Source: Magallana gigas
Lineage: Eukaryota
Assembly: GCF_963853765.1 (NCBI RefSeq)
Contig: NC_088860.1
Coordinates: 30,194,001-30,258,000, forward strand
Reading direction: 5' to 3'
Length of the DNA: 64,000 nt
Shown here: positions 2,018 to 9,782 of the stretch, piece after piece
Layout of the letters: each line of letters opens with the position of its first letter
How positions within the stretch are numbered: position 1 is the first letter of the stretch
Notes under the pieces: generated by a model
What the model was told of the DNA's origin: nothing
What the model saw: the letters and a program-made list of their open reading frames with translations, nothing else
Databases searched by the model: none
Translations under genes and position numbers: made by a program

Positions 2018-2413
2018 TTATGCACTGTCTACTGTCATGAATCTGTTGTGTGGCAGGGATTGGACGGTGTTGGCTTCTTCGATTTCTGTATCTGGGTTTG
2101 GTGCACAGTCTCCCTCTTCTTCTTCTAGGATGGAATAGCGGTTTGATAAATTAATTGATGAATAGAAGCTACAGGGTGGTGATGATATAGGCGATGATGG
2201 AAGCCTCGAACGTTTTCGTTGTTTGTATGGTGAAGGAGAGTCTCTGGATCTTTTCTTCTGAGCAGGTGTTTTGGTCGATGGCGAAGACTGCGGCGTCACT
2301 GTAGTGGATGGTAATGAGTGAGGAGACAATGGTGGTGACGTGGGCACATGTCTTGTAGTCTTTGGTAGTTTAGACTCCTTAGTCTTTTGTCGAGGAGGCG
2401 ATGGTGAAACATC
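2018..2413 (-). pseudogene. C-terminal Ser/Pro-rich half of the OTU/vertnin-like ORF interrupted by the 2414-8627 insertion
   Basis: Encodes DVSPSPPRQKTKESK...LSNRYSILEEE...DSA*. It continues in frame from ...FDQRVFE (ending at 8628) once 2414-8627 is removed. Its first ~40 aa are a diverged copy of the repeat at 8650-8760. Confidence 0.7.
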
Positions 2414-3219
2414 CATGCCAAGAAATGCCGTCCGGTTTAGAATAAGCCTAGCTAACGGTCTTCAATTATACACTTAATTAAGGTCAGCCGCATTTGCTTG
2501 AAAACCCGCAATAAGGGATCGAGCCGAACTAAAGTTTCAGAGATTTGGGTCAGCGGCTGTTTACGACAGTCTTTAGAGTGCCAATGTTTATAGCTTAGAG
2601 ATACGTGTTGGGATAAGAATAAAAAGGACACAAGCTAAGATTTGGAAGACAGACACTTTGTAATTAAAAAAAATAATTATGTGATTTTCCTCTTTTACTT
2701 ATTCATCGTCTCCATATTGTTTACACTTGGAAACACAATCTCTAAGAATTATTTCTCTCTGAAATACAGAATGTTATGTTTTGTTTGGGGGGTTTTTTTT
2801 TTATAAACCTAGCATTTTTTAAAAAATTAAGCCGATATACGTACATGTAATATTGATGTACGTCATGTAAAGTGTTAAATACACGGGTATCTTTTTTGTT
2901 AAGAGAGTTTTAATTAAGGTATGGCTAACTAACCTTGTATTAAAGGAACTGAAGAAATTTGAAATATTCAATCGGATGCAAATGTATGACCACCGCAGGG
3001 TTTATTATTATGCGATGTTTCATATAATAAATGTTACATGAAAGTTTATAGCGTTAATTTTTAAGGTATGCTGTAGAATGTATATAACACTTTTTTATTG
3101 TTAGTTTTGAATATATTTCGTTAAACAGACACTGCACCGATCAATTATCTGTATTGGTGGGAAATCCGAAATGCAAAAATTCTGGTAAACCGGTAAAAAC
3201 TAAAACAAAAGTTGTAAAA

Positions 3220-6200
3220 ATGTCGAATTTTTTTCGACCATGGGTGGAGACACGGCCGGCTGTACCTGTGCGTAGACGTGTAATGTTGCCGTTGAATAAC
3301 AACATGCAGGTACGTAACTACTTGTTTATGGATGATTCATAGTGTAGGTGATCAATACATTAAAGTTACCCACTCAGTAGAATGATAACTATAGGCTATA
3401 TTTTAGCAAAAAATTAAGCCGAAATACTTATATAGTGAATATGCAGAATTTATATAAAAGTCAATGTATGTGTATTTGACAAATTTATGTTGATATTGTA
3501 TGTCATGTCAGTTATTGAAGCTTTATAATTTTTTTAATTTTTATTTCACATGCATATTTTATTGCAATAGGACCACGATGATATGGAAAATAAGAAAACT
3601 CCACGCAAAGTAAAAGGATTTTTTGAGCTGAAACATTCTCAAAGAGGAGAAAGGAAAAGAAAATACCAAAGCGCTTTTCAAGAAGCTTCAAGCTGTGTTC
3701 ACAGTGATATTTCCTCCATCAAAGTCCAGTTCAATTTTGATAATGGACATGTTTTATCCTTTTTTCCCCGCAAAGTGTCCCCTGATGAAAATGCTAGTTT
3801 GGAAGATGAAGGTGTTAAGAAATCTCAAGATCTTGCTGTAATTCAACAGGTTATTGCAGTTAAGGACAAGTTCAGAATTTCTGACGAAGCTTTACATGAA
3901 CTTCATATGATTGGTTCAATAATACCAAGCAAGTCAGCCATCAATACAGAAAAATACCGTCTCAACACAACTCTTGAAATAATGAGCCATCCAACAGTAA
4001 GTACATGTACCGTGCTTTTTTATGTGTTGACCACTGACTTATTTAGCACGTTTTATTATCTTATCATTTGAATATCAAATTTAGAAACCGATCGATCATA
4101 GCACAAGCCAATTTACTTTTATTTATTTTTTTAACAAAGGCAGACTGCAGTACTAGAAAGCTAGAGCACATTCTAGAGTTTGTACTTCAACACAAAAAAT
4201 ACCAGAAGTATATTGAGAATGACACTGTTACCCTGCGTTTTTCCTGTGATGGTGCCAAAATTGCCAAAAATATCTCCTCAGTAAGAGGGGTGTTCAAGAT
4301 TTTGGCACCAAGACAGTCATTGCCAGATAAGCTTGAAGATTTGAGCATGTGTCCAGAAGATGAGTTTACTCTTTTCTTTTACATTGGTGAGAAACTTTGT
4401 ATTTATTGAAATTTCCTGTCATGTATTTTGGAATTATTATTTCGATTATCACATGTTTATTTCAATTAAGGAGATGAAAATCGATGCAGTTTAGAGGAAT
4501 ATGCCTCTGGGACATTAAGAGACATGGAAAATGTTCAATTGAATGGAATTGTAATCAATGGAAGAAAAATCTCTGTAAAGTGGTAAAGTTATCTCATCAT
4601 CTACGGTTATCGTTTTTTTTATTCTATACCCTATTTGTTATTATAATATCATTTCAAATTCTAAACTGGTACAATTATATATTTTGTAGGATAATGACTT
4701 GTGATTGGAAGGCACTTGCCTTACTGAGGGGAATTAATGGCGCTCAATGCGAATTTTTCTGCATGTGGTGCCACTGCTCCAAAAAGCAGATATGCGATTT
4801 CAGTAGTAAGTAACTGTTGTAAATTGATAAAATGATACAAACATTGTAATAAAAACAATAGCAATTGCTGGACAACTAATGTGATTTTATAATGTTTTTT
4901 GTAGTCCCATCTTGGTTGATACAGAGATCTAAAGAAGAACAACAAACTGTTCTAAATTCTGAAAAGAAAACGTTCGGGTACAAAGATACAGATCTCTGCC
5001 CTTTCATTTCATACCATGACATGCCCATTGATGATCTTCACATGCGCATAAGGATTTCTCTAAAGCTCTTCAATCAGGTACATTGTCTCTTATTAATATA
5101 CACGAATGTATACTTTTAACGACTCTGCTAACTATCTGCATACACAAGATCTCCTTGCTTGATTTTGACAATTTTAAATTCAGCTTGTGACCTGGGCAAT
5201 AGACCAGAAATCTGAAGACAATTTGAAAAGAGAACTGAAACGCGTAGGTGTCAGTTTCAGAATGTGGGAGGAAAGGGGGGATGACAAATTGAACACCAAA
5301 GTGAGGAAATGGTCTCAACCAACAGGTATATATATGCCTTTCTTTAAAAAAAAATACTATAAGTGTTTGCAGTTCTTGTAGCAAATCTTCTGAAAAATAT
5401 TTGCCATTTCATTTGTAGGTGATGATTTACGTAAAATTATAAGAGACGTTCAAATCCATCATATTCTGGACAATAAAAAGGACAGGCACTACGTATCAAT
5501 AGAAAGCCTTTCAGTACAGCAGTTGAGGGACGAATTAACTAACAGACAGCTTTCCAAAAAAGGAAAAAAACCCGAACTTGTAGCCCGATTAAAAGATGCT
5601 GTCGGAAATAACACTAAGGTATATTTACAGAAACTCAAATTCACTGAATAACATTTATATTTCCTGAATGTTTACATAGTAATATAAAACTTTTCATTCA
5701 TGTTGTTTTAGATGAGGAGGAATGTAGGCTCTCGTCTTCAGGTATCGTACGACTTTTCAGAAGATGAAGAACAGGACCTGGACGTCGCAGCCCTGCAAGA
5801 TCTGTGGTCAGGTTTCCATACGCTCATGGAAAGTCTCCGGGCATTACCTGGAACAGATAATTACAAAGATATGGAAACTTTTGCAAAAGAAGCAAAAGAA
5901 TGGGCCACTGAATTTCGAAAGCAAACCTTCGATGAAGATGTTATCCCATACATTCATGGTGTGTAAAAATGTTAAAGATTCTATAAAGGAATCATACAGC
6001 CTATCCCTACTTCTTTCAGGGTATAAAATTCATTTTGTTTAAATTACATTTTCAGCTATGGTTTATCATGTACCACAGTTTCTGCAGACATACCACTACA
6101 TACATGATATCGGGGTTGCCCAAGTTGAGCGTAAAAATTTTGACCATCGTCAAGCGTACTTTGGAAGCACCAACAGAAATGGGTCCAAATGGAAAAAACA

Positions 6201-6425
6201 TGTCTCAAAGCAGGTACATACCATTATTCAGATAGTCAATCTGCTTGATTTGTTTCACAAATTTTTCTGCCTTCTGCAATGAATAATTAATCAAAGATAA
6301 ATATGCATTTCAGTCCTTGTCATACTTGTGATCTTTAATTACAGATTCTTGAGAGGGAAAATAGAATGCTTTGGTCCAGTCTACATGGAACTGTACGTGA
6401 AAAAAGAAAATATGTAAAGTCTTAA
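3220..6425 (+). CDS. RAG1-like (Transib/Chapaev/RAG1 clade) DDE transposase, 663 aa, 11 exons, with inserted SAP domain
   Basis: Exons 3220-3309, 3571-3996, 4140-4386, 4471-4582, 4690-4805, 4905-5077, 5184-5325, 5419-5618, 5712-5958, 6056-6213, 6345-6425. All introns are GT-AG and phase-compatible; 1992 nt with no internal stop. Motifs: FSCDG (D, 4248), TCDWK (D, 4703), CMWC at D+19/+22, IDDLH, PYIHAMVYH (H-x4-H), AQVE (E, 6127) at H+20. These spacings equal mouse RAG1 D600/D708/C727/C730/H937/H942/E962. RKVKGFFELKHSQRGERKRK resembles the nonamer-binding-type helix. The first ATG choice (3220) is inferred. Confidence 0.88.
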
Positions 6426-8473
6426 ATACCGTCGTTTAGCTACAGTCCCAGTAACCATGTTTCTACGAGACCTTGTAAAAGTTACATGAATCCATGATGG
6501 ACCACGAACATACAGTATTACAGGGTCACATAGCTGTGGTCGGTTCTCCTCGGCATCTTTCCATGTGCATCTAAACAAAGATTTTTATAATGAAGCAGAT
6601 CTTTATTATTATCAAGCAATATTTATTAAGAAGCCCACAAAGATGAACAAATATTGTATTTCTATGTATAGAAATGTTGTTTTTTTATATTAGAATAATA
6701 TTGTATCACACTTTTGATATTATTGTTATTGTTTTTACTATTACAATTAAGTAAATAATGTATAAAATTGATGTTCCTTATTGCAATAATATTGTATCAC
6801 ACATTTGTTATTATTATTGTTTTTTTTTAAATTAAGTAAATAAACATTCACATTGGATTAAATTTATGTAATCATACCTTTTACAATTATTGTGTTGGTA
6901 TTGCTTTCTCTCCTTATATCCCCACCAGACATGAATAAATTCTTTGAAGGAGACAAATGTTTCTGTTGATGTTTTGTAACATCTATTTGACCAGTTCTCT
7001 CCAATGGCAGAAGTCATTTCTTCACCTGTAAAAATAAACATAAATTACTTAACAATTATTTTTAGTAACCGAACACTTGCATTCCAAGTATGTCTTTCAA
7101 GATACCTCCTGTCTCCACTTGCATGGGACCAAAACTTTAAATAGACTTGTCATATGCTCAAGAAAACAATTATCATAATATTGCTTCAGATAGTTCATTA
7201 CCTGTGAGGTAGAAATCCACATTTCCATTGTCTGTTGGCAGAGTATCCATCAAAGACCTGAAGTATTTATTAAAACTTGCACAAGAAAAAGGCACTTTCA
7301 CTGTTGTCCTCGACTGGATGCCTAATGCACCATCAGGTGTACGGCGTGCATCGCCTAAACTGTCAAAGATGGCCTGTCGCAGTGCCATAATGTCATCAGG
7401 GTTGTTCCTGCAGTCTATTTTGTTGGAATCTAAATTCCTGCGGTGAAGATGACAAGAGAGGGGGTTTCCTTTATTTCTTTCAATGAATTGCTGCAATTCC
7501 TGGTTTCCATCTAAACTGACCCAGGTTGATGGTCCCTCCCAGTCCTTCCATTTTACTAGCACTTCTTGCTCCCTCCTCTCTAAAATGTCTTCAATCTCCC
7601 ATAGTTTCTGAGATAAATTGTTGAGAATAGTTTAAAACATGAATGATTATTCTATTATTGTTTTTCTTAATTAGTTTGGATAATTCATAATTTTTCCCGA
7701 TGTAGGATATTCGTGATCTAAGAGTGGCGCTAGATCCGCCTACACACTTTGACTGAGATTTGTATACCTGCTTCAAATAAATATAAATAATAGTCTAATA
7801 TAGTTCTAAAATACACATAAAGGTAGATCAAAAGGGAACCCTAACGATATTTAACGATCGCAAACCATAATATATACATAGATATGTCTATACATATTAT
7901 AAACATCATCAGGGACTTGTACTATGATTATTACAACTATTCTTAGAAATGAATATGTTACAAAAGTTTAAATGTAAGTATATACGATATTTGTATAATA
8001 ATATTTATTGTTATACTTTCATGTTAAATACTGAAATCTGATTGGTTAAGACGCAGTTAATAATATTTTCTATTACCCTCAGCGTTAGCAACGCACTTAG
8101 CAACGGGTAACATTAAAAAATGTTACATGCGCGAAAATTATGCGCGTACGGTTCGCTGTAGAATTCACGTTATTCCTATATAAAAGCAGTAAAATTTTCT
8201 TAAAAATTAAGACATTCAGTATAACAAAATAAATAGTGCCTGTTTGGGAGGATAACAGTTGAAATTGACACCCCTCGAAAACCATTGTCAACCTCCGCTT
8301 CGCGTCGGTTGACAATGGTTTTCTCGGGGTGTCAATTTCAACTGTTACCCTCCCAAACAGGCACTATTTATATAGTGTACCTCTTTCGACTTGTTCTCCT
8401 TTAAACTTCTAAAATTTAAATTTTCCTCCCAATCTCCGAATCTTACAGGGGCTCTTCTCTTTCTCTGTGCCAT
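6381..8473 (-). CDS. Chromodomain-containing partner protein, 256 aa, 4 exons, convergent with the transposase
   Basis: Exons (minus) 8473-8447 (MAQRKRRAP, donor GTAAGA), 7607-7202, 7025-6878, 6570-6381. GT-AG introns with phases 0/1/2 consistent; 771 nt open. N-terminus KLWEIEDILERREQEVLVKWKDWEGPSTWV matches the chromo fold pattern. The remaining ~200 aa are unrecognised and include HNNCKRCTW...LC. Confidence 0.8.
8002..8372 (+). mobile_element. Non-autonomous element ending in a ~143-bp palindrome (family A), inserted in intron 1 of the chromodomain gene
   Basis: 5' TTATACTTTCATGTTAAATACTGAAATCTGATTGG; 3' hairpin ATAAATAGTGCCTGTTTGGGAG...CTCCCAAACAGGCACTATTTAT (8229-8371). Relatives at 37628-37856 and 38458-38630. 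Superfamily (Crypton-like or Helitron-like) not determined. Confidence 0.8.
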
Positions 8474-8627
8474 TTCTTAGATAAGAATGCAGCTGAAGAA
8501 AGCACACAGGGAGCTCGATTTCACTTAATCGGTTCATCGCCGTGGTAACGCTGACCGCCTGGGATGTGGTCACTAATTTATAACGGGGTTGTGAAAGCGG
8601 AATTTTGGAGCAGAATTTCTTGGCATG

Positions 8628-9295
8628 TTCAAACACACGTTGATCAAAAGTAGGCGATGGCAACGAATATGGAGACGATGGTGGTGATGTACGCACATGC
8701 CTCGTTGTTGTTGTTACCTTGGATTGTTTTGTCTTTTTTCGAGGAGGCGAAGGTGATCTTGCTGATTTGGGTGTTGATTTGTTCCCGCGGCTAATTTTGA
8801 AGCTGAAGTTGAACTCCCTCCTGTCATTGTTTGGCACAGACGATGTTGATTTTGATGGCACGACGGGAACAAAATGGTTGGGTGTCCACTGCTTGTTTGG
8901 TTTAGGTGGCATGGTACTGGTCCACATGATTTTAATGGCAGTGTCACTGATGGGATCCTCGGGTGACGTTTTCAAGTTCAACTTTTGGAAGGCCAGGTCT
9001 TGAGTACCATTAACGCATGGGTAAAGTATTTCCATAGGCACGTTGATTATGTTGGATAGTGCAAGTATGGTCCAAACACATGAATATTGTCTTGGTCGGG
9101 CACACTCCTTGTTTAAAGCGGTGTCATATGTTGGCGAGAGACTAGCCCGATCCTTGTGTTGTTGGATGTTTTCTTTGTTGAGGAACATCTCCAAGCAAGA
9201 TTTAAAACGTAGCTCTGTGGCCAAGGACTCGTCTCCAACCAACAGCGTTGAAACGGAATTAAAAAGGCAATCAGACTTGGTAGATTTTGTGATGG
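8628..9295 (-). pseudogene. OTU-type cysteine protease (vertnin-like) domain ORF, 5'-truncated and split by the transposon
   Basis: Part of track ORF 8409..9395: SDCLFNSVSTLLVGDESLATELR ... WTILALSNII ... IMWTS ... WTPNHFVPVV. This is the Cys-box/His-box pattern of OTU/vertnin-like domains, but the usual GDGN before the Cys is degenerate. Confidence 0.7.
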
Positions 9296-9299
9296 TTTT

Positions 9300-9782
9300 T
9301 TGGGTGTACCTGGTGAATGTCGTTTTTATGGTGTTGGAGGAATGAGAGCCGATAGGGTGGATCAGAGGGTTTTTTGTGCATTGCTGGAATTTCAACCAGA
9401 AACAGTGTTTGTGTGTATAGGTGGAAACGACATTAGTATGAATTCCAGTCCACGACAGACTTTTGAGAATGTTAACGAAATAGTGAACATTCTTACTAAC
9501 AATGGTACCAAAAACGTGTATATCGGCGAAATAATGACAAGGGGACAGTTTTCCAGATCACCAGGCCTGACGAAAGATATGTTCGACAAGAAGAGGAAAC
9601 TGATCAACAAAAACTTGAAAAAGAAATACGGACGATTCTTTGTGACATTTAGTGATATTCATTTTCCGGACCACTACGATAAGGATAAGGTGCACCTAAA
9701 CACCGACAGAACTGTAAGGGATTCGGTGCCCGGAATGAAGAAATTCCAGTGTAGACTTATACGTGTCTTGTGTAGACAATGA
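9300..9782 (+). pseudogene. SGNH/GDSL hydrolase fragment lacking the N-terminal GDS block
   Basis: GVGGMRA (block II), FVCIGGNDI (block III) and DKDKVHLN (block V) are present. No block I serine motif is visible upstream and the ORF begins at a non-ATG codon. Confidence 0.7.

What the first reader, a model, noticed from the sequence alone, without database searches (positions are those of the whole stretch)
2414..8627. ProtoRAG-like architecture with a chromodomain gene in place of RAG2L
Seen: TIRs enclose an intact RAG1-like transposase (+) and an intact convergent partner gene (-). Known: ProtoRAG/RAGL transposons carry convergent RAG1L and a kelch(-PHD) RAG2L, the RAG2 PHD reads H3K4me3, and Transib elements have the transposase only. 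Here the partner shows no recognisable kelch repeats or PHD but has a chromodomain, a different methyl-lysine reader fold. Inference: a separate two-component RAG1-family lineage that recruited a chromatin reader independently. I do not recognise it as described, but could not search.
Basis: partly seen in the sequence, partly recalled or inferred. Interest (0 to 1): 0.92.

Follow-up and report, generated by a model that had tools for sequence, protein, structure and literature searches.

The report
Two-gene oyster transposon with chromodomain partner
This is a young, transcribed DNA transposon of the Pacific oyster that pairs a RAG1-fold cutting enzyme with a chromodomain partner gene; the pair recurs across molluscs, the element inserts without the usual target duplication, and I found no published description of it.

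Summary
Window 2414-8627 is a discrete mobile element, and homology to two other copies (98-99.5% identical) starts and stops exactly at those bases. Its ends are a perfect 13-bp inverted repeat. RNA contigs give exact splice sites for two intact convergent genes: a 629/663-aa transposase (+ strand) and a 268-aa partner (- strand).

- **Transposase.** It has no sequence-level match to RAG1. Its model matches RAG1, BbRAGL and HzTransib far above other solved folds (Z 20.5, 18.6, 17.4; next is P element at 10.4). It keeps the DDE, CxxC and HxxxxH residues at RAG1 spacing.
- **Caveat.** Those motifs and that fold are shared by the whole CACTA-Mirage-Chapaev-Transib (CMCT) clade. Predicted-structure libraries place it as close to CMC families. 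Being sister to RAG1 is therefore unproven.
- **Partner.** It carries a real chromodomain with three conserved aromatic residues at the cage positions, followed by about 190 aa of unknown fold. It has no kelch or PHD match.
- **Conservation.** The gene pair, its orientation and the same 13-mer recur in Mytilus. The pair also recurs in Saccostrea (right-end 13-mer only), Mercenaria, Littorina and a second oyster subfamily (same 13-mer, one mismatch at the right end). dN/dS is 0.13 and 0.16.
- **Unexpected result.** Paralogous empty sites for two insertions show no target-site duplication.

No description was found in the searchable literature. Repbase and Dfam could not be checked.

The parts
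2414..8627 (+). Whole transposon: 6214 bp here, about 5850 bp without the nested MITE
   Evidence: Homology to copies L002 and L003 begins and ends exactly here. The copies are 98.3-99.5% identical.
2414..2426 (+). Left terminal inverted repeat, CATGCCAAGAAAT
   Evidence: The identical 13-mer is the left end in Mytilus (L031) and in oyster subfamily 2 (L053, L054).
8615..8627 (-). Right terminal inverted repeat (reverse complement of the left one)
   Evidence: The same 13-mer is the right end in Mytilus and Saccostrea, and in subfamily 2 with one mismatch.
8569..8586 (.). Conserved right-end subterminal box (reads CCGTTATAAATTAGTGAC inward from the end), about 28 bp inside the TIR
   Evidence: Nearly identical in both oyster subfamilies and in Saccostrea despite divergent spacers. 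A role as a second transposase-binding site is inferred.
3220..6425 (+). Transposase coding region. Short isoform (629 aa) exons: 3583-3996, 4140-4386, 4471-4582, 4690-4805, 4905-5077, 5184-5325, 5419-5618, 5712-5958, 6056-6213, 6345-6425. Long isoform (663 aa) adds 3220-3309 spliced to 3571. The mRNA spans about 3150-6645.
   Evidence: Splice joints come from RNA contigs and were mapped and translated. It is 99.7% identical to NCBI LOC105327491. The fold matches RAG1, RAGL and Transib.
4248..4250 (+). Codon of catalytic D175 (in the motif CDGAK)
   Evidence: The D is present in every family sequence that covers this position in alignment A2.
4703..4771 (+). D263 followed by C282 and C285 (D +19 and +22, the ZnC2-type motif)
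   Evidence: This was the only segment hhalign paired with oyster RAG1L. Oyster CMC transposases have the same spacing.
5496..5603 (+). SAP DNA-binding domain, inserted between the CxxC and HxxxxH motifs
   Evidence: Pfam PF02037, E 5e-10 to 5e-9, above the cut-off. Structural Z is 4.8-6.0 to solved SAP domains. It is absent from the Batillaria homologue.
5955..6129 (+). H550 and H555 (HxxxxH, spanning intron 8) and catalytic E575, which lies 20 residues after the second H
   Evidence: The spacings equal those of oyster RAG1L (H916, H921, E941).
6255..8473 (-). Partner gene coding region, 268 aa. Exons: 8473-8381, 7607-7202, 7025-6878, 6570-6430, 6273-6255. Its 3' UTR runs on to about 5607 and is antisense to transposase exons 7-10.
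   Evidence: CT..AC joints in RNA contigs and translation. Homologues are 38-81% identical and convergent to the transposase in five other loci.
7443..7607 (-). Chromodomain of the partner (about aa 32-86), with three conserved aromatic cage positions (W, W, W)
   Evidence: The family profile hits only chromodomains in PDB sequences, best E 6e-5. The AF2 model has the strand-strand-strand-helix topology, and the top 50 Foldseek hits are all chromodomains. Invariant W residues are listed.
8007..8369 (.). Nested palindromic MITE, not part of the element proper, inside partner intron 1
   Evidence: It is absent from L002 and L003, and at least 117 matching pieces occur elsewhere in the genome, most of them full-length copies 97-100% identical.

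Best explanation
Window 2414-8627 is one of three near-identical copies of an active, low-copy, cut-and-paste DNA transposon of Crassostrea gigas. It belongs to an unnamed mollusc lineage. Gene 1 encodes a DDE transposase with the RAG1/Transib-type core: RNase H fold, CxxC plus HxxxxH zinc site, and an inserted SAP DNA-binding domain. This places it in the broad CACTA-Mirage-Chapaev-Transib/RAG1 (CMCT) clade, but in none of its named families. Inferred: the enzyme binds the conserved 13-bp termini (5'-CA...TG-3') and probably a subterminal box, excises the element, and joins both ends to the target at the same base-pair step, so no target-site duplication arises. Gene 2 is convergent, and its transcript overlaps the transposase transcript in antisense. 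It encodes a 268-aa protein with an N-terminal chromodomain, a conserved domain of unknown fold and a basic tail. Because it has travelled with the transposase under purifying selection since before bivalves and gastropods split, it is most likely an accessory subunit of the transposition machinery. My best guess is that it couples the transposase to methyl-lysine-marked, repeat-rich chromatin, playing a role analogous to the RAG2 PHD finger or to the chromodomains of chromoviral integrases. Shown: mobility, boundaries, gene models, transcription, folds, linkage and absence of a TSD. Inferred: the cleavage chemistry, binding between the partner and the transposase, and histone reading.
For: - Mobility: three copies with exact shared ends and unrelated flanks, plus a deleted derivative.
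- No TSD: five paralogous empty sites for the L002 insertion read straight through the insertion point with nothing gained or lost. The same holds for the subfamily-2 insertion L053. None of five complete insertions has flanking direct repeats.
- Transposase fold: Foldseek gives 46 hits at E <= 0.001, all of them RAG1, BbRAGL or HzTransib. VIA-align gives Z 20.5 to RAG1 over about 400 residues (model 113-626 against RAG1 460-980), then Z 10.4 for P element and 7.7 for Hermes.
- Residues D175, D263, C282, C285, H550, H555 and E575 sit at RAG1L spacings.
- SAP domain.
- Chromodomain.
- Linkage: convergent partner next to the transposase in Mytilus, Mercenaria, Littorina, Saccostrea and a second oyster subfamily. 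The 13-mer TIR is identical in Mytilus, where the proteins are about 48-55% identical.
- Selection: Crassostrea against Saccostrea gives dN/dS 0.13 for the transposase and 0.16 for the partner.
- Expression: spliced contigs for both genes in RNA libraries.
- All four oyster insertions examined lie in repeated DNA.
Against: - No sequence-level match to any transposase family. The placement rests on a medium-quality model (pLDDT 65, pTM 0.59) and on short motifs.
- Binding between the partner and the transposase is untested; the complex prediction gave no verdict.
- About 190 aa of the partner have no fold assignment (pLDDT under 50).
- The chromodomain is below Pfam's gathering score (21.2 against 25.1 bits). 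Its best PDB sequence match is cpSRP43, whose chromodomains bind an arginine motif rather than methyl-lysine.
- The Batillaria homologue has no partner within 10 kb.
- Insertion into repeats, 4 of 4, is weak evidence in a repeat-rich genome.
- The empty sites are paralogous, not allelic.
Confidence: 0.7

Rival explanations
1. One reading: the transposase is a third branch of the RAG1/Transib family proper, closer to RAG1 and Transib than to CMC elements. On this view the element is a parallel to ProtoRAG that recruited a chromatin reader independently.
For: All significant solved-structure hits are RAG1, RAGL or Transib, with Z 17-20. The zinc motif is HxxxxH as in RAG1 and oyster RAG1L, whereas the oyster CMC transposases examined have HxxxH. 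Protein-language-model neighbours include RAG1 clusters. The architecture is convergent and two-gene.
Against: No CMC transposase structure appears among the PDB hits, so RAG1 would probably top a PDB search for any CMCT member. ESM Atlas structural neighbours are DUF1280, Transposase_21 and Plavaka families (TM 0.45-0.56), and no RAG1 cluster appears among the 99 nearest. hhalign aligns 186 columns with oyster CMC transposases (E 0.044) against 28 columns with RAG1L (E 0.35). After the catalytic E the motif is ER.N as in CMC. There is no CAC heptamer and no 5-bp TSD.
Confidence: 0.35
2. The element is a divergent CMC-type transposon (Chapaev-like or Mirage-like). Its likeness to RAG1 is only the fold and motifs shared by the whole CMCT clade.
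For: See, cited under the first rival explanation. The best AlphaFold DB hits are uncharacterised proteins of 559-764 aa at E 1e-30 to 1e-18. By accession and name these look to me like amphioxus, coral, Nematostella and Rhizophagus entries. Amphioxus and Nematostella are the hosts in which Chapaev was first described (PMC4411706). The termini are 5'-CA..TG-3' (PMC12730594).
Against: There is no Pfam Transposase_21 hit, although that model finds 35 loci elsewhere in this genome. The zinc motif is HxxxxH, not HxxxH. CMC elements make 2-4 bp TSDs and this one makes none. The hhalign E-value is not significant.
Confidence: 0.4
3. The partner is a passenger with no part in the transposition reaction, for example a captured host chromodomain gene that modulates silencing or expression of the element.
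For: No interaction has been shown. The Batillaria copy lacks the partner. DNA transposons of this clade do carry cargo genes such as TET/JBP (PMC12730594). The two transcripts overlap in antisense, which could be regulatory.
Against: Position, orientation and purifying selection are conserved across bivalves and a gastropod. The non-chromodomain part and the basic tail are the most conserved segments, which suits a dedicated interaction surface.
Confidence: 0.2
4. The lack of a TSD arises because the copies are excised blunt-ended elements captured at chromosomal breaks by end joining, not products of transposase-catalysed strand transfer.
For: RAG-type cleavage leaves blunt transposon ends (established knowledge). 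Copy number is very low.
Against: Both testable insertions are exact to the base, with no loss or gain of target or element letters. All ends of five complete elements are intact. End-joining capture usually leaves small deletions or filler.
Confidence: 0.12
5. The two genes are a domesticated host gene pair rather than a transposon.
For: Both genes are intron-rich, expressed and under purifying selection.
Against: There are three copies 98-99.5% identical at unrelated loci with exact TIR-defined ends, inserted in repeats whose other copies are empty. A second subfamily and decayed fragments also exist.
Confidence: 0.03

Closest known systems
RAGL / ProtoRAG transposons (convergent RAG1L and RAG2L inside TIRs; PMC7204232)
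   Same: Both have two convergent genes inside short TIRs. Both have a DDE transposase with the RAG1 core fold and C2/H2 zinc site. In both, the partner carries a domain of a methyl-lysine-reader class. Both occur as low-copy elements in the same oyster genome.
   Different: The partner here is a 268-aa chromodomain protein, not a kelch propeller with a PHD finger. There is no sequence-level similarity to RAG1L. There is no RAG1 N-terminal zinc region or recognisable nonamer-binding domain, since the structural alignment starts at RAG1 residue 460. A SAP domain is inserted. The TIR starts CATGCCA, not CACTATG or CACTWMC. The TSD is 0 bp, not 5 bp.
Transib transposons (HzTransib; the Nozomi lineage, bioRxiv 10.64898/2026.08.26.747230)
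   Same: Core fold (Z 17.4 to 6pqx), DDE plus CxxC plus HxxxxH, and 5'-CA..TG-3' ends. The Nozomi lineage shows that TSD length and TIR sequence are labile in this group (5 bp, 3 bp, TA).
   Different: Transib elements carry a single gene. No Transib is reported with a 0-bp TSD. This element has introns and a SAP insert, and its sequence similarity to Transib is undetectable with the searches I could run.
CMC superfamily (CACTA/EnSpm, Mirage, Chapaev) and Plavaka within the CMCT clade (PMC12730594)
   Same: Shared D-x18-CxxC and H-x19-E spacing, 5'-CA..TG-3' termini, comparable predicted-structure similarity (TM 0.45-0.54), and the longest though non-significant hhalign alignment. Some CMCT lineages carry a second gene.
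   Different: No Transposase_21 or Plavaka Pfam hit. HxxxxH instead of the HxxxH seen in the oyster CMC copies. CMC elements make 2-4 bp TSDs and this one makes none. No chromodomain partner is reported for them.
Spy elements (PIF/ISL2EU-like, TSD-less; PMC4122938)
   Same: Both are eukaryotic cut-and-paste elements with TIRs that insert precisely without a target-site duplication.
   Different: The transposase superfamily is unrelated (PHIS). Spy inserts at a specific AAA|TTT site, whereas the five sites here share no motif.
Chromoviral (Ty3/gypsy) integrase chromodomains
   Same: Both are mobile elements that carry a chromodomain, which in chromoviruses is thought to direct integration to heterochromatin.
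   Different: Here the chromodomain is on a separate protein of a DNA transposon, not fused to a retroviral-type integrase.

Membership tests
RAG1/Transib superfamily | RAG1-core fold (DDBD, pre-RNH, RNH, ZnC2, ZnH2, CTD) | tested here: met
   VIA-align Z 20.5 (RAG1), 18.6 (BbRAGL) and 17.4 (HzTransib) over 340-410 residues; the next fold scores 10.4. Foldseek best E 3.5e-8. Caveat: no CMC transposase structure appeared for comparison.
RAG1/Transib superfamily | DDE triad with CxxC 19 residues after the second D, and HxxxxH with E 20 residues after the second H | tested here: met
   D175, D263, C282, C285, H550, H555, E575, against oyster RAG1L D686, C705, C708, H916, H921, E941. This is not exclusive: oyster CMC transposases share the D-to-C and H-to-E spacings.
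RAG1/Transib superfamily | Detectable sequence homology to RAG1 or Transib profiles | tested here: not met
   Pfam scans gave no RAG1 hit. PF12940 finds 5 RAG1L loci in the genome but not this element. A family profile against PDB sequences gave 0 hits. hhalign gave E 0.34. The newer Pfam models (PF26100 and related) are not in the library.
RAG1/Transib superfamily | TIR beginning with an RSS-like CAC heptamer | tested here: not met
   The termini are CATGCCAAGAAAT in all copies and species. Only the CA is shared.
RAG1/Transib superfamily | 5-bp target-site duplication | tested here: not met
   0 bp at two insertions with paralogous empty sites, and no flanking repeats at five complete insertions.
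RAG1/Transib superfamily | Phylogenetic placement with Transib and RAG1 rather than with CMC | tested here: inconclusive
   The hhalign and Atlas comparisons do not separate the two options. No Transib or Chapaev sequences could be fetched for a tree.
RAGL / ProtoRAG transposon | Convergent transposase and partner genes inside one TIR pair | tested here: met
   for the window; for other loci.
RAGL / ProtoRAG transposon | Partner is a RAG2-like six-bladed kelch propeller, with or without a PHD finger | tested here: not met
   The partner is 268 aa. Pfam gives only a weak Chromo hit, the PDB profile hits are all chromodomains, and the model shows a chromodomain followed by a low-confidence mixed alpha/beta region.
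CMC (EnSpm/CACTA-Mirage-Chapaev) | Match to the CMC transposase profile (Pfam Transposase_21 or Plavaka) | tested here: not met
   No hit at E <= 10. PF02992 finds 35 other loci in the genome, none at this element.
CMC (EnSpm/CACTA-Mirage-Chapaev) | 5'-CA..TG-3' termini and 2-4 bp TSD | tested here: inconclusive
   The termini fit (CATG...CATG). The TSD does not (0 bp).
CMCT clade (PMC12730594) | DDE plus two conserved C and three conserved H between the second D and E | tested here: met
   C282, C285, H550 and H555, plus the H of the conserved DDLH motif.
Chromodomain (partner) | Three-stranded sheet plus C-terminal helix, with three aromatic cage residues | tested here: met
   The model has strands at 6-13, 20-25 and 33-36 and a helix at 41-49, with pLDDT 65-86. 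The top 50 Foldseek hits are all chromodomains. All 21 profile hits are chromodomains, best E 6e-5. The W residues are invariant. The Pfam gathering score is not reached (21.2 against 25.1 bits).
Chromodomain (partner) | Binds methyl-lysine | not testable with these tools
   Inferred from the aromatic cage only. The best sequence match, cpSRP43, binds an arginine motif (my own knowledge).
SAP domain (transposase insert) | Pfam PF02037 above its cut-off | tested here: met
   36-39 bits against a cut-off of 23.9. Structural Z is 4.8-6.0.

The most novel reading that the evidence does not exclude
A deep, previously unrecognised branch of the RAG1/Transib-CMC transposase clade evolved its own obligate chromatin-reading subunit. 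This is a chromodomain protein, convergently encoded as RAG2 is. It binds the transposase and gates or directs a zero-stagger (TSD-less) integration into methyl-lysine-marked chromatin. If so, coupling a RAG1-fold nuclease to a histone-mark reader arose at least twice, and the strand-transfer geometry of this fold can shrink from 5 bp to 0 bp.
Probability: 0.3. Interest if true: 0.9.

Novelty: new variant of a known kind. Interest (0 to 1): 0.72.

Why it matters
**RAG evolution.** How a RAG1-type transposase came to depend on a second, chromatin-reading subunit is a central open question about the origin of V(D)J recombination. So far it has only one natural example, RAG2 and RAG2L. This element offers an independent natural experiment: the same fold class, the same gene arrangement, and a different reader domain. 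It is present as intact, transcribed, nearly identical copies in a farmed, laboratory-tractable animal that also carries canonical RAG1L genes.

**Mechanism.** It is also the first member of the CACTA-Mirage-Chapaev-Transib clade I could find that inserts with no target-site duplication. That bears on how strand-transfer stagger is set in this fold.

**Annotation.** TSD-requiring transposon finders, including the RAGL search protocol of PMC7204232, would miss such elements.

**Conserved ends.** The 13-bp end, conserved at about 50% protein identity, makes the DNA-protein interface easy to test.

Tried and rejected
- **Pfam on raw ORFs and exons.** No transposase family was found.
- **PDB sequence search.** Neither exon 2 alone nor the family profile matched any transposase.
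- **hhalign.** The family against oyster RAG1L and against oyster CMC transposases gave non-significant E-values. I used these only as pointers.
- **CATG as a palindromic 4-bp TSD.** Rejected, because paralogous empty sites contain no CATG at the insertion point.
- **Empty site for the window copy itself.** The only paralogue is 82% identical with indels near the junction, so it is uninformative.
- **Empty site for L003.** Its flanks lie in a complex satellite-like repeat and could not be resolved.
- **Complex prediction (Mytilus transposase with the partner core).** No verdict; the score was 0.00 and the partner folded poorly. This counts neither for nor against binding.
- **Atlas feature search with the non-chromodomain part of the partner.** It returned only low-overlap bacterial clusters, which I treated as noise.
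- **Fold of the partner beyond residue 50.** pLDDT is below 50, so no assignment was attempted.
- **Pfam PF26100.** The model is not in the library.
- **Full-length partner.** It could not be given to the search or folding tools because it has no stop-free reference. I used exon-level and Mytilus single-exon references instead.
- **Literature.** Seven full-text searches found no description of a chromodomain partner, a SAP-bearing RAG1-fold transposase or a TSD-less Transib or CMC element. Yuan & Wessler 2011 is not held.
- **Tree.** No tree was built, because no Transib, Chapaev or Mirage sequences could be fetched, and a three-group unrooted tree would not answer the question.

Full report
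**1. What is at the coordinates**

The DNA is AT-rich animal DNA with introns. Its transposase is 99.7% identical to NCBI LOC105327491 of Crassostrea gigas, so the genome (564 Mb) is the Pacific oyster or a very close relative.

A whole-genome search with 2414-8627 found two more full copies, on C6 (L002) and C7 (L003). Alignment to the window starts at base 2414 and ends at base 8627, and beyond these bases the flanks are unrelated.

The three copies are 98.3-99.5% identical. The window copy carries a nested palindromic MITE of about 363 bp at 8007-8369; matching pieces occur at least 117 times elsewhere. L003 carries a different 1.1-kb nested insertion near its left end. A deleted derivative lies on C1.

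The ends are a perfect 13-bp inverted repeat, CATGCCAAGAAAT.

**2. Gene models from RNA**

I laid contigs of four runs on the MITE-free copy L002 (5850 bases, within the operators' limit). At least two of the runs are RNA libraries. This gave nine GT..AG joints and five CT..AC joints, including one 2571-nt contig that carries the whole spliced + strand mRNA.

Transferred to the window, every splice site is canonical.
- The + strand gene encodes 629 aa in ten coding exons (3583-6425).
- An alternative 5' exon (3220-3309, joined to 3571) gives the 663-aa RefSeq form.
- The - strand gene encodes 268 aa in five coding exons (8473 down to 6255).
- The partner's transcript continues to about 5607, so the two mRNAs overlap in antisense over transposase exons 7-10.
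- Both genes are intact in the window.

**3. The transposase**

Sequence methods are blind to it.
- Pfam finds only a SAP domain (E 5e-10).
- Neither exon 2 nor a family profile hits any PDB sequence of a transposase.
- Pfam RAG1 (PF12940) finds five canonical RAG1L loci in this genome, including two with intact 1015-aa ORFs, but does not find this gene.

An AlphaFold2 model of the 663-aa protein was built with 23 aligned relatives (pLDDT 65, pTM 0.59; the core is mostly 70-90). It gives a clear structural answer.
- All 46 Foldseek hits at E <= 0.001 are RAG1, amphioxus BbRAGL or HzTransib.
- VIA-align gives Z 20.5 to RAG1, with about 400 residues aligned (model 113-626 against RAG1 460-980). 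It gives Z 18.6 to BbRAGL and 17.4 to HzTransib, then drops to 10.4 for P element and 7.7 for Hermes.

The catalytic and zinc residues are D175, D263, C282, C285, H550, H555 and E575. Their spacings are D +19/+22 to the two C, H-x4-H, and H +20 to E. These equal the spacings in the oyster's own RAG1L. From memory, they also equal those of mouse RAG1 (D708, C727, C730, H937, H942, E962). This confirms the sibling note s1-359047. The SAP domain sits between the CxxC and HxxxxH motifs.

**4. Why this does not yet make it a RAG1-family element**

- I checked this in the same genome. Oyster Transposase_21 (CMC) transposases have the identical D-x18-CxxC and H-x19-E spacings, and differ only in having HxxxH.
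- No CMC transposase structure appears among the PDB hits, so RAG1 would probably top a PDB search for any CMCT protein.
- In predicted-structure libraries the nearest neighbours are not RAG1.
  - ESM Atlas gives uncharacterised Mucoromycota and rotifer clusters, DUF1280, Transposase_21 and Plavaka (TM 0.45-0.56), with no RAG1 set among the 99 nearest.
  - AlphaFold DB gives uncharacterised proteins at E 1e-30 to 1e-18 and 17-27% identity. By accession and name these look to me like amphioxus, coral, Nematostella and Rhizophagus entries.
- Local hhalign aligns 186 columns, from D1 through D2 to the DDLH motif, with oyster CMC transposases (E 0.044). With RAG1L it aligns only the 28-column D2-CxxC segment (E 0.35). 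Neither is significant.
- The protein-language-model search lists DUF1280 first and RAG1 clusters from rank 10.

My reading is that this is an unplaced, deep lineage of the CMCT clade. HxxxxH points towards Transib and RAG1. The ER.N motif after the catalytic E and the structural neighbours point towards CMC. I give about 0.35 to the first option and 0.40 to the second.

**5. The partner**

A profile of ten family sequences hits only chromodomain proteins among PDB sequences: 21 of 21 hits, with cpSRP43 best at E 6e-5, then CDYL, LHP1, CBX and MPP8. Pfam Chromo scores just under its gathering threshold (E 2.7e-4).

The AF2 model of the Mytilus core has a confident strand-strand-strand-helix unit at its N-terminus, and its top 50 Foldseek matches are all chromodomains. 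The three positions that form the aromatic cage in HP1-type chromodomains are W, W and W, and the two in the core are invariant. This agrees with note s1-359015.

The remaining 190 aa or so have no recognisable fold (pLDDT under 50). They are nevertheless strongly conserved, including an H..C..C...C pattern and a basic tail. There is no kelch or PHD signal, and 268 aa is too short for a six-bladed propeller.

**6. Linkage elsewhere**

The transposase family is found only in molluscs with my searches: Crassostrea, Saccostrea, Mytilus, Mercenaria, Littorina and Batillaria.

A partner homologue lies immediately downstream in convergent orientation in each of these:
- Mytilus californianus (48% identity)
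- Mercenaria mercenaria (50%)
- Littorina saxatilis (38%)
- Saccostrea cucullata (81-92%)
- a second, roughly 55%-diverged subfamily in the oyster itself (L053), plus a decayed copy on C1

Only the Batillaria copy, which also lacks SAP, shows no partner within 10 kb.

The Mytilus element is bounded by exactly the same 13-mer. Saccostrea has it at the right end. Subfamily 2 has it at both ends, with one mismatch. A subterminal box about 28 bp inside the right end is also conserved.

Between Crassostrea and Saccostrea, dN/dS is 0.13 for the transposase and 0.16 for the partner, at dS about 0.57. The pair is therefore a conserved functional unit, and this refutation test is passed.

**7. No target-site duplication**

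None of the five complete insertions has flanking direct repeats. Because CATG is palindromic it could have been a hidden TSD, so I looked for empty sites.

The L002 copy sits in a high-copy repeat. Five other copies of that repeat (93-95% identical) read ...GGATCG|ATATGAC... straight across the insertion point, with no CATG, no gap and no extra base. The subfamily-2 copy L053 gives the same result in a different repeat...AAAATG|TTCGGCC... in five copies.

So the CATG belongs to the element, and insertion neither duplicates nor deletes target bases. RAGL, Transib and RAG make 5-bp TSDs (PMC7204232). CMC elements make 2-4 bp. The new Nozomi lineage makes 5 bp, 3 bp or TA (bioRxiv 10.64898/2026.08.26.747230). 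Zero has been reported among eukaryotic cut-and-paste elements only for the unrelated Spy group (PMC4122938). The five target sites share no motif. All four oyster insertions lie in repeated DNA, which is suggestive at best.

**8. Mechanism**

- Shown: mobility, exact ends, two expressed intact genes, the folds, the linkage, purifying selection and precise TSD-less insertion.
- Inferred from the fold family: DDE catalysis at the 5'-CA ends, probably by nick and hairpin; paired-end complex formation on the 13-mer plus the subterminal box; and strand transfer with zero stagger.
- Inferred from conservation and domain content: the partner is an accessory subunit that links the transposase to methyl-lysine-marked chromatin.
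- The complex prediction gave no verdict, so binding remains untested.

**9. Novelty and verdict**

Seven literature searches found nothing describing this pair, a SAP-bearing RAG1-fold transposase, or a TSD-less CMC or Transib element. All database names for these proteins are "uncharacterized" or "SAP domain-containing". Repbase and Dfam could not be searched.

I rate this a new variant of a known kind: a new lineage of the CMCT clade with a new kind of partner and a new insertion geometry. Interest is 0.72.

Noticed in passing
window 8007-8369: A palindromic MITE of about 363 bp (75-nt arms, 91% complementary at its centre). At least 117 matching pieces occur in the genome, most of them full-length copies 97-100% identical, and some are nested or tandem. 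Its very high identity suggests recent amplification.
   Followed up: partly
window 2018-2413 and 8628-9395 (- strand), and 9300-9782 (+ strand): The element sits inside another repeat that encodes a protein with a weak OTU-like cysteine protease hit (Pfam E 3e-4) and a Ser/Pro-rich repeat that is internally duplicated. That duplication is why the two flanks resemble each other. An adjacent ORF looks to me like an SGNH/GDSL-type hydrolase; I did not test this. A paralogue lies at C8:428011-429473.
   Followed up: partly
G000 C2:53473763-53475607 (L048) and C9:44605801-44607645 (L049): Two canonical RAG1L genes with intact intron-less 1015-aa ORFs (Pfam RAG1, 276-286 bits), plus decayed copies on C6 and C10. 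The same genome therefore holds both classical RAGL-type genes and the new element. I did not look for RAG2L or TIRs around them.
   Followed up: no
L003 387-1500 (G000 C7, about 46822986-46824099): A 1.1-kb insertion in the 5' region of the C7 copy. It has its own inverted repeats of about 25 bp and what looks like a duplicated GTTTAC target. It is an unrelated nested transposon.
   Followed up: no
L030 1501-1620 (G000 C1:26541572-26541678): An internally deleted derivative of the element. Its right end reads ...TTCTTAGCAT and is followed directly by CTTAGCAT, a tandem doubling of the terminal 8 bases. This could be a footprint or a replication slip.
   Followed up: no
G000 C9:461103-491721: Five same-strand occurrences of the 13-mer CATGCCAAGAAAT, spaced 7.4-8.3 kb apart. 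This is probably a tandem array that happens to contain it. I did not examine it.
   Followed up: no
protein P0064 (UniRef K1RKL9_MAGGI): An older oyster gene model named 'rRNA-processing protein FCF1 homolog' contains 193 residues that are 99% identical to the SAP-bearing part of this transposase. It is either an annotation chimera or a fourth insertion in another assembly.
   Followed up: no
window 5607-6425: The partner's 3' UTR is spliced and runs antisense across transposase exons 7-10. The Saccostrea annotation shows the same 3' overlap. This may provide sense-antisense regulation of the two genes.
   Followed up: partly
L046 (Littorina saxatilis, JBAMIC010003215.1): The Littorina transposase-partner pair lies inside the span of a tetraspanin gene model, probably in an intron. 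No 13-mer ends were found within two mismatches.
   Followed up: no
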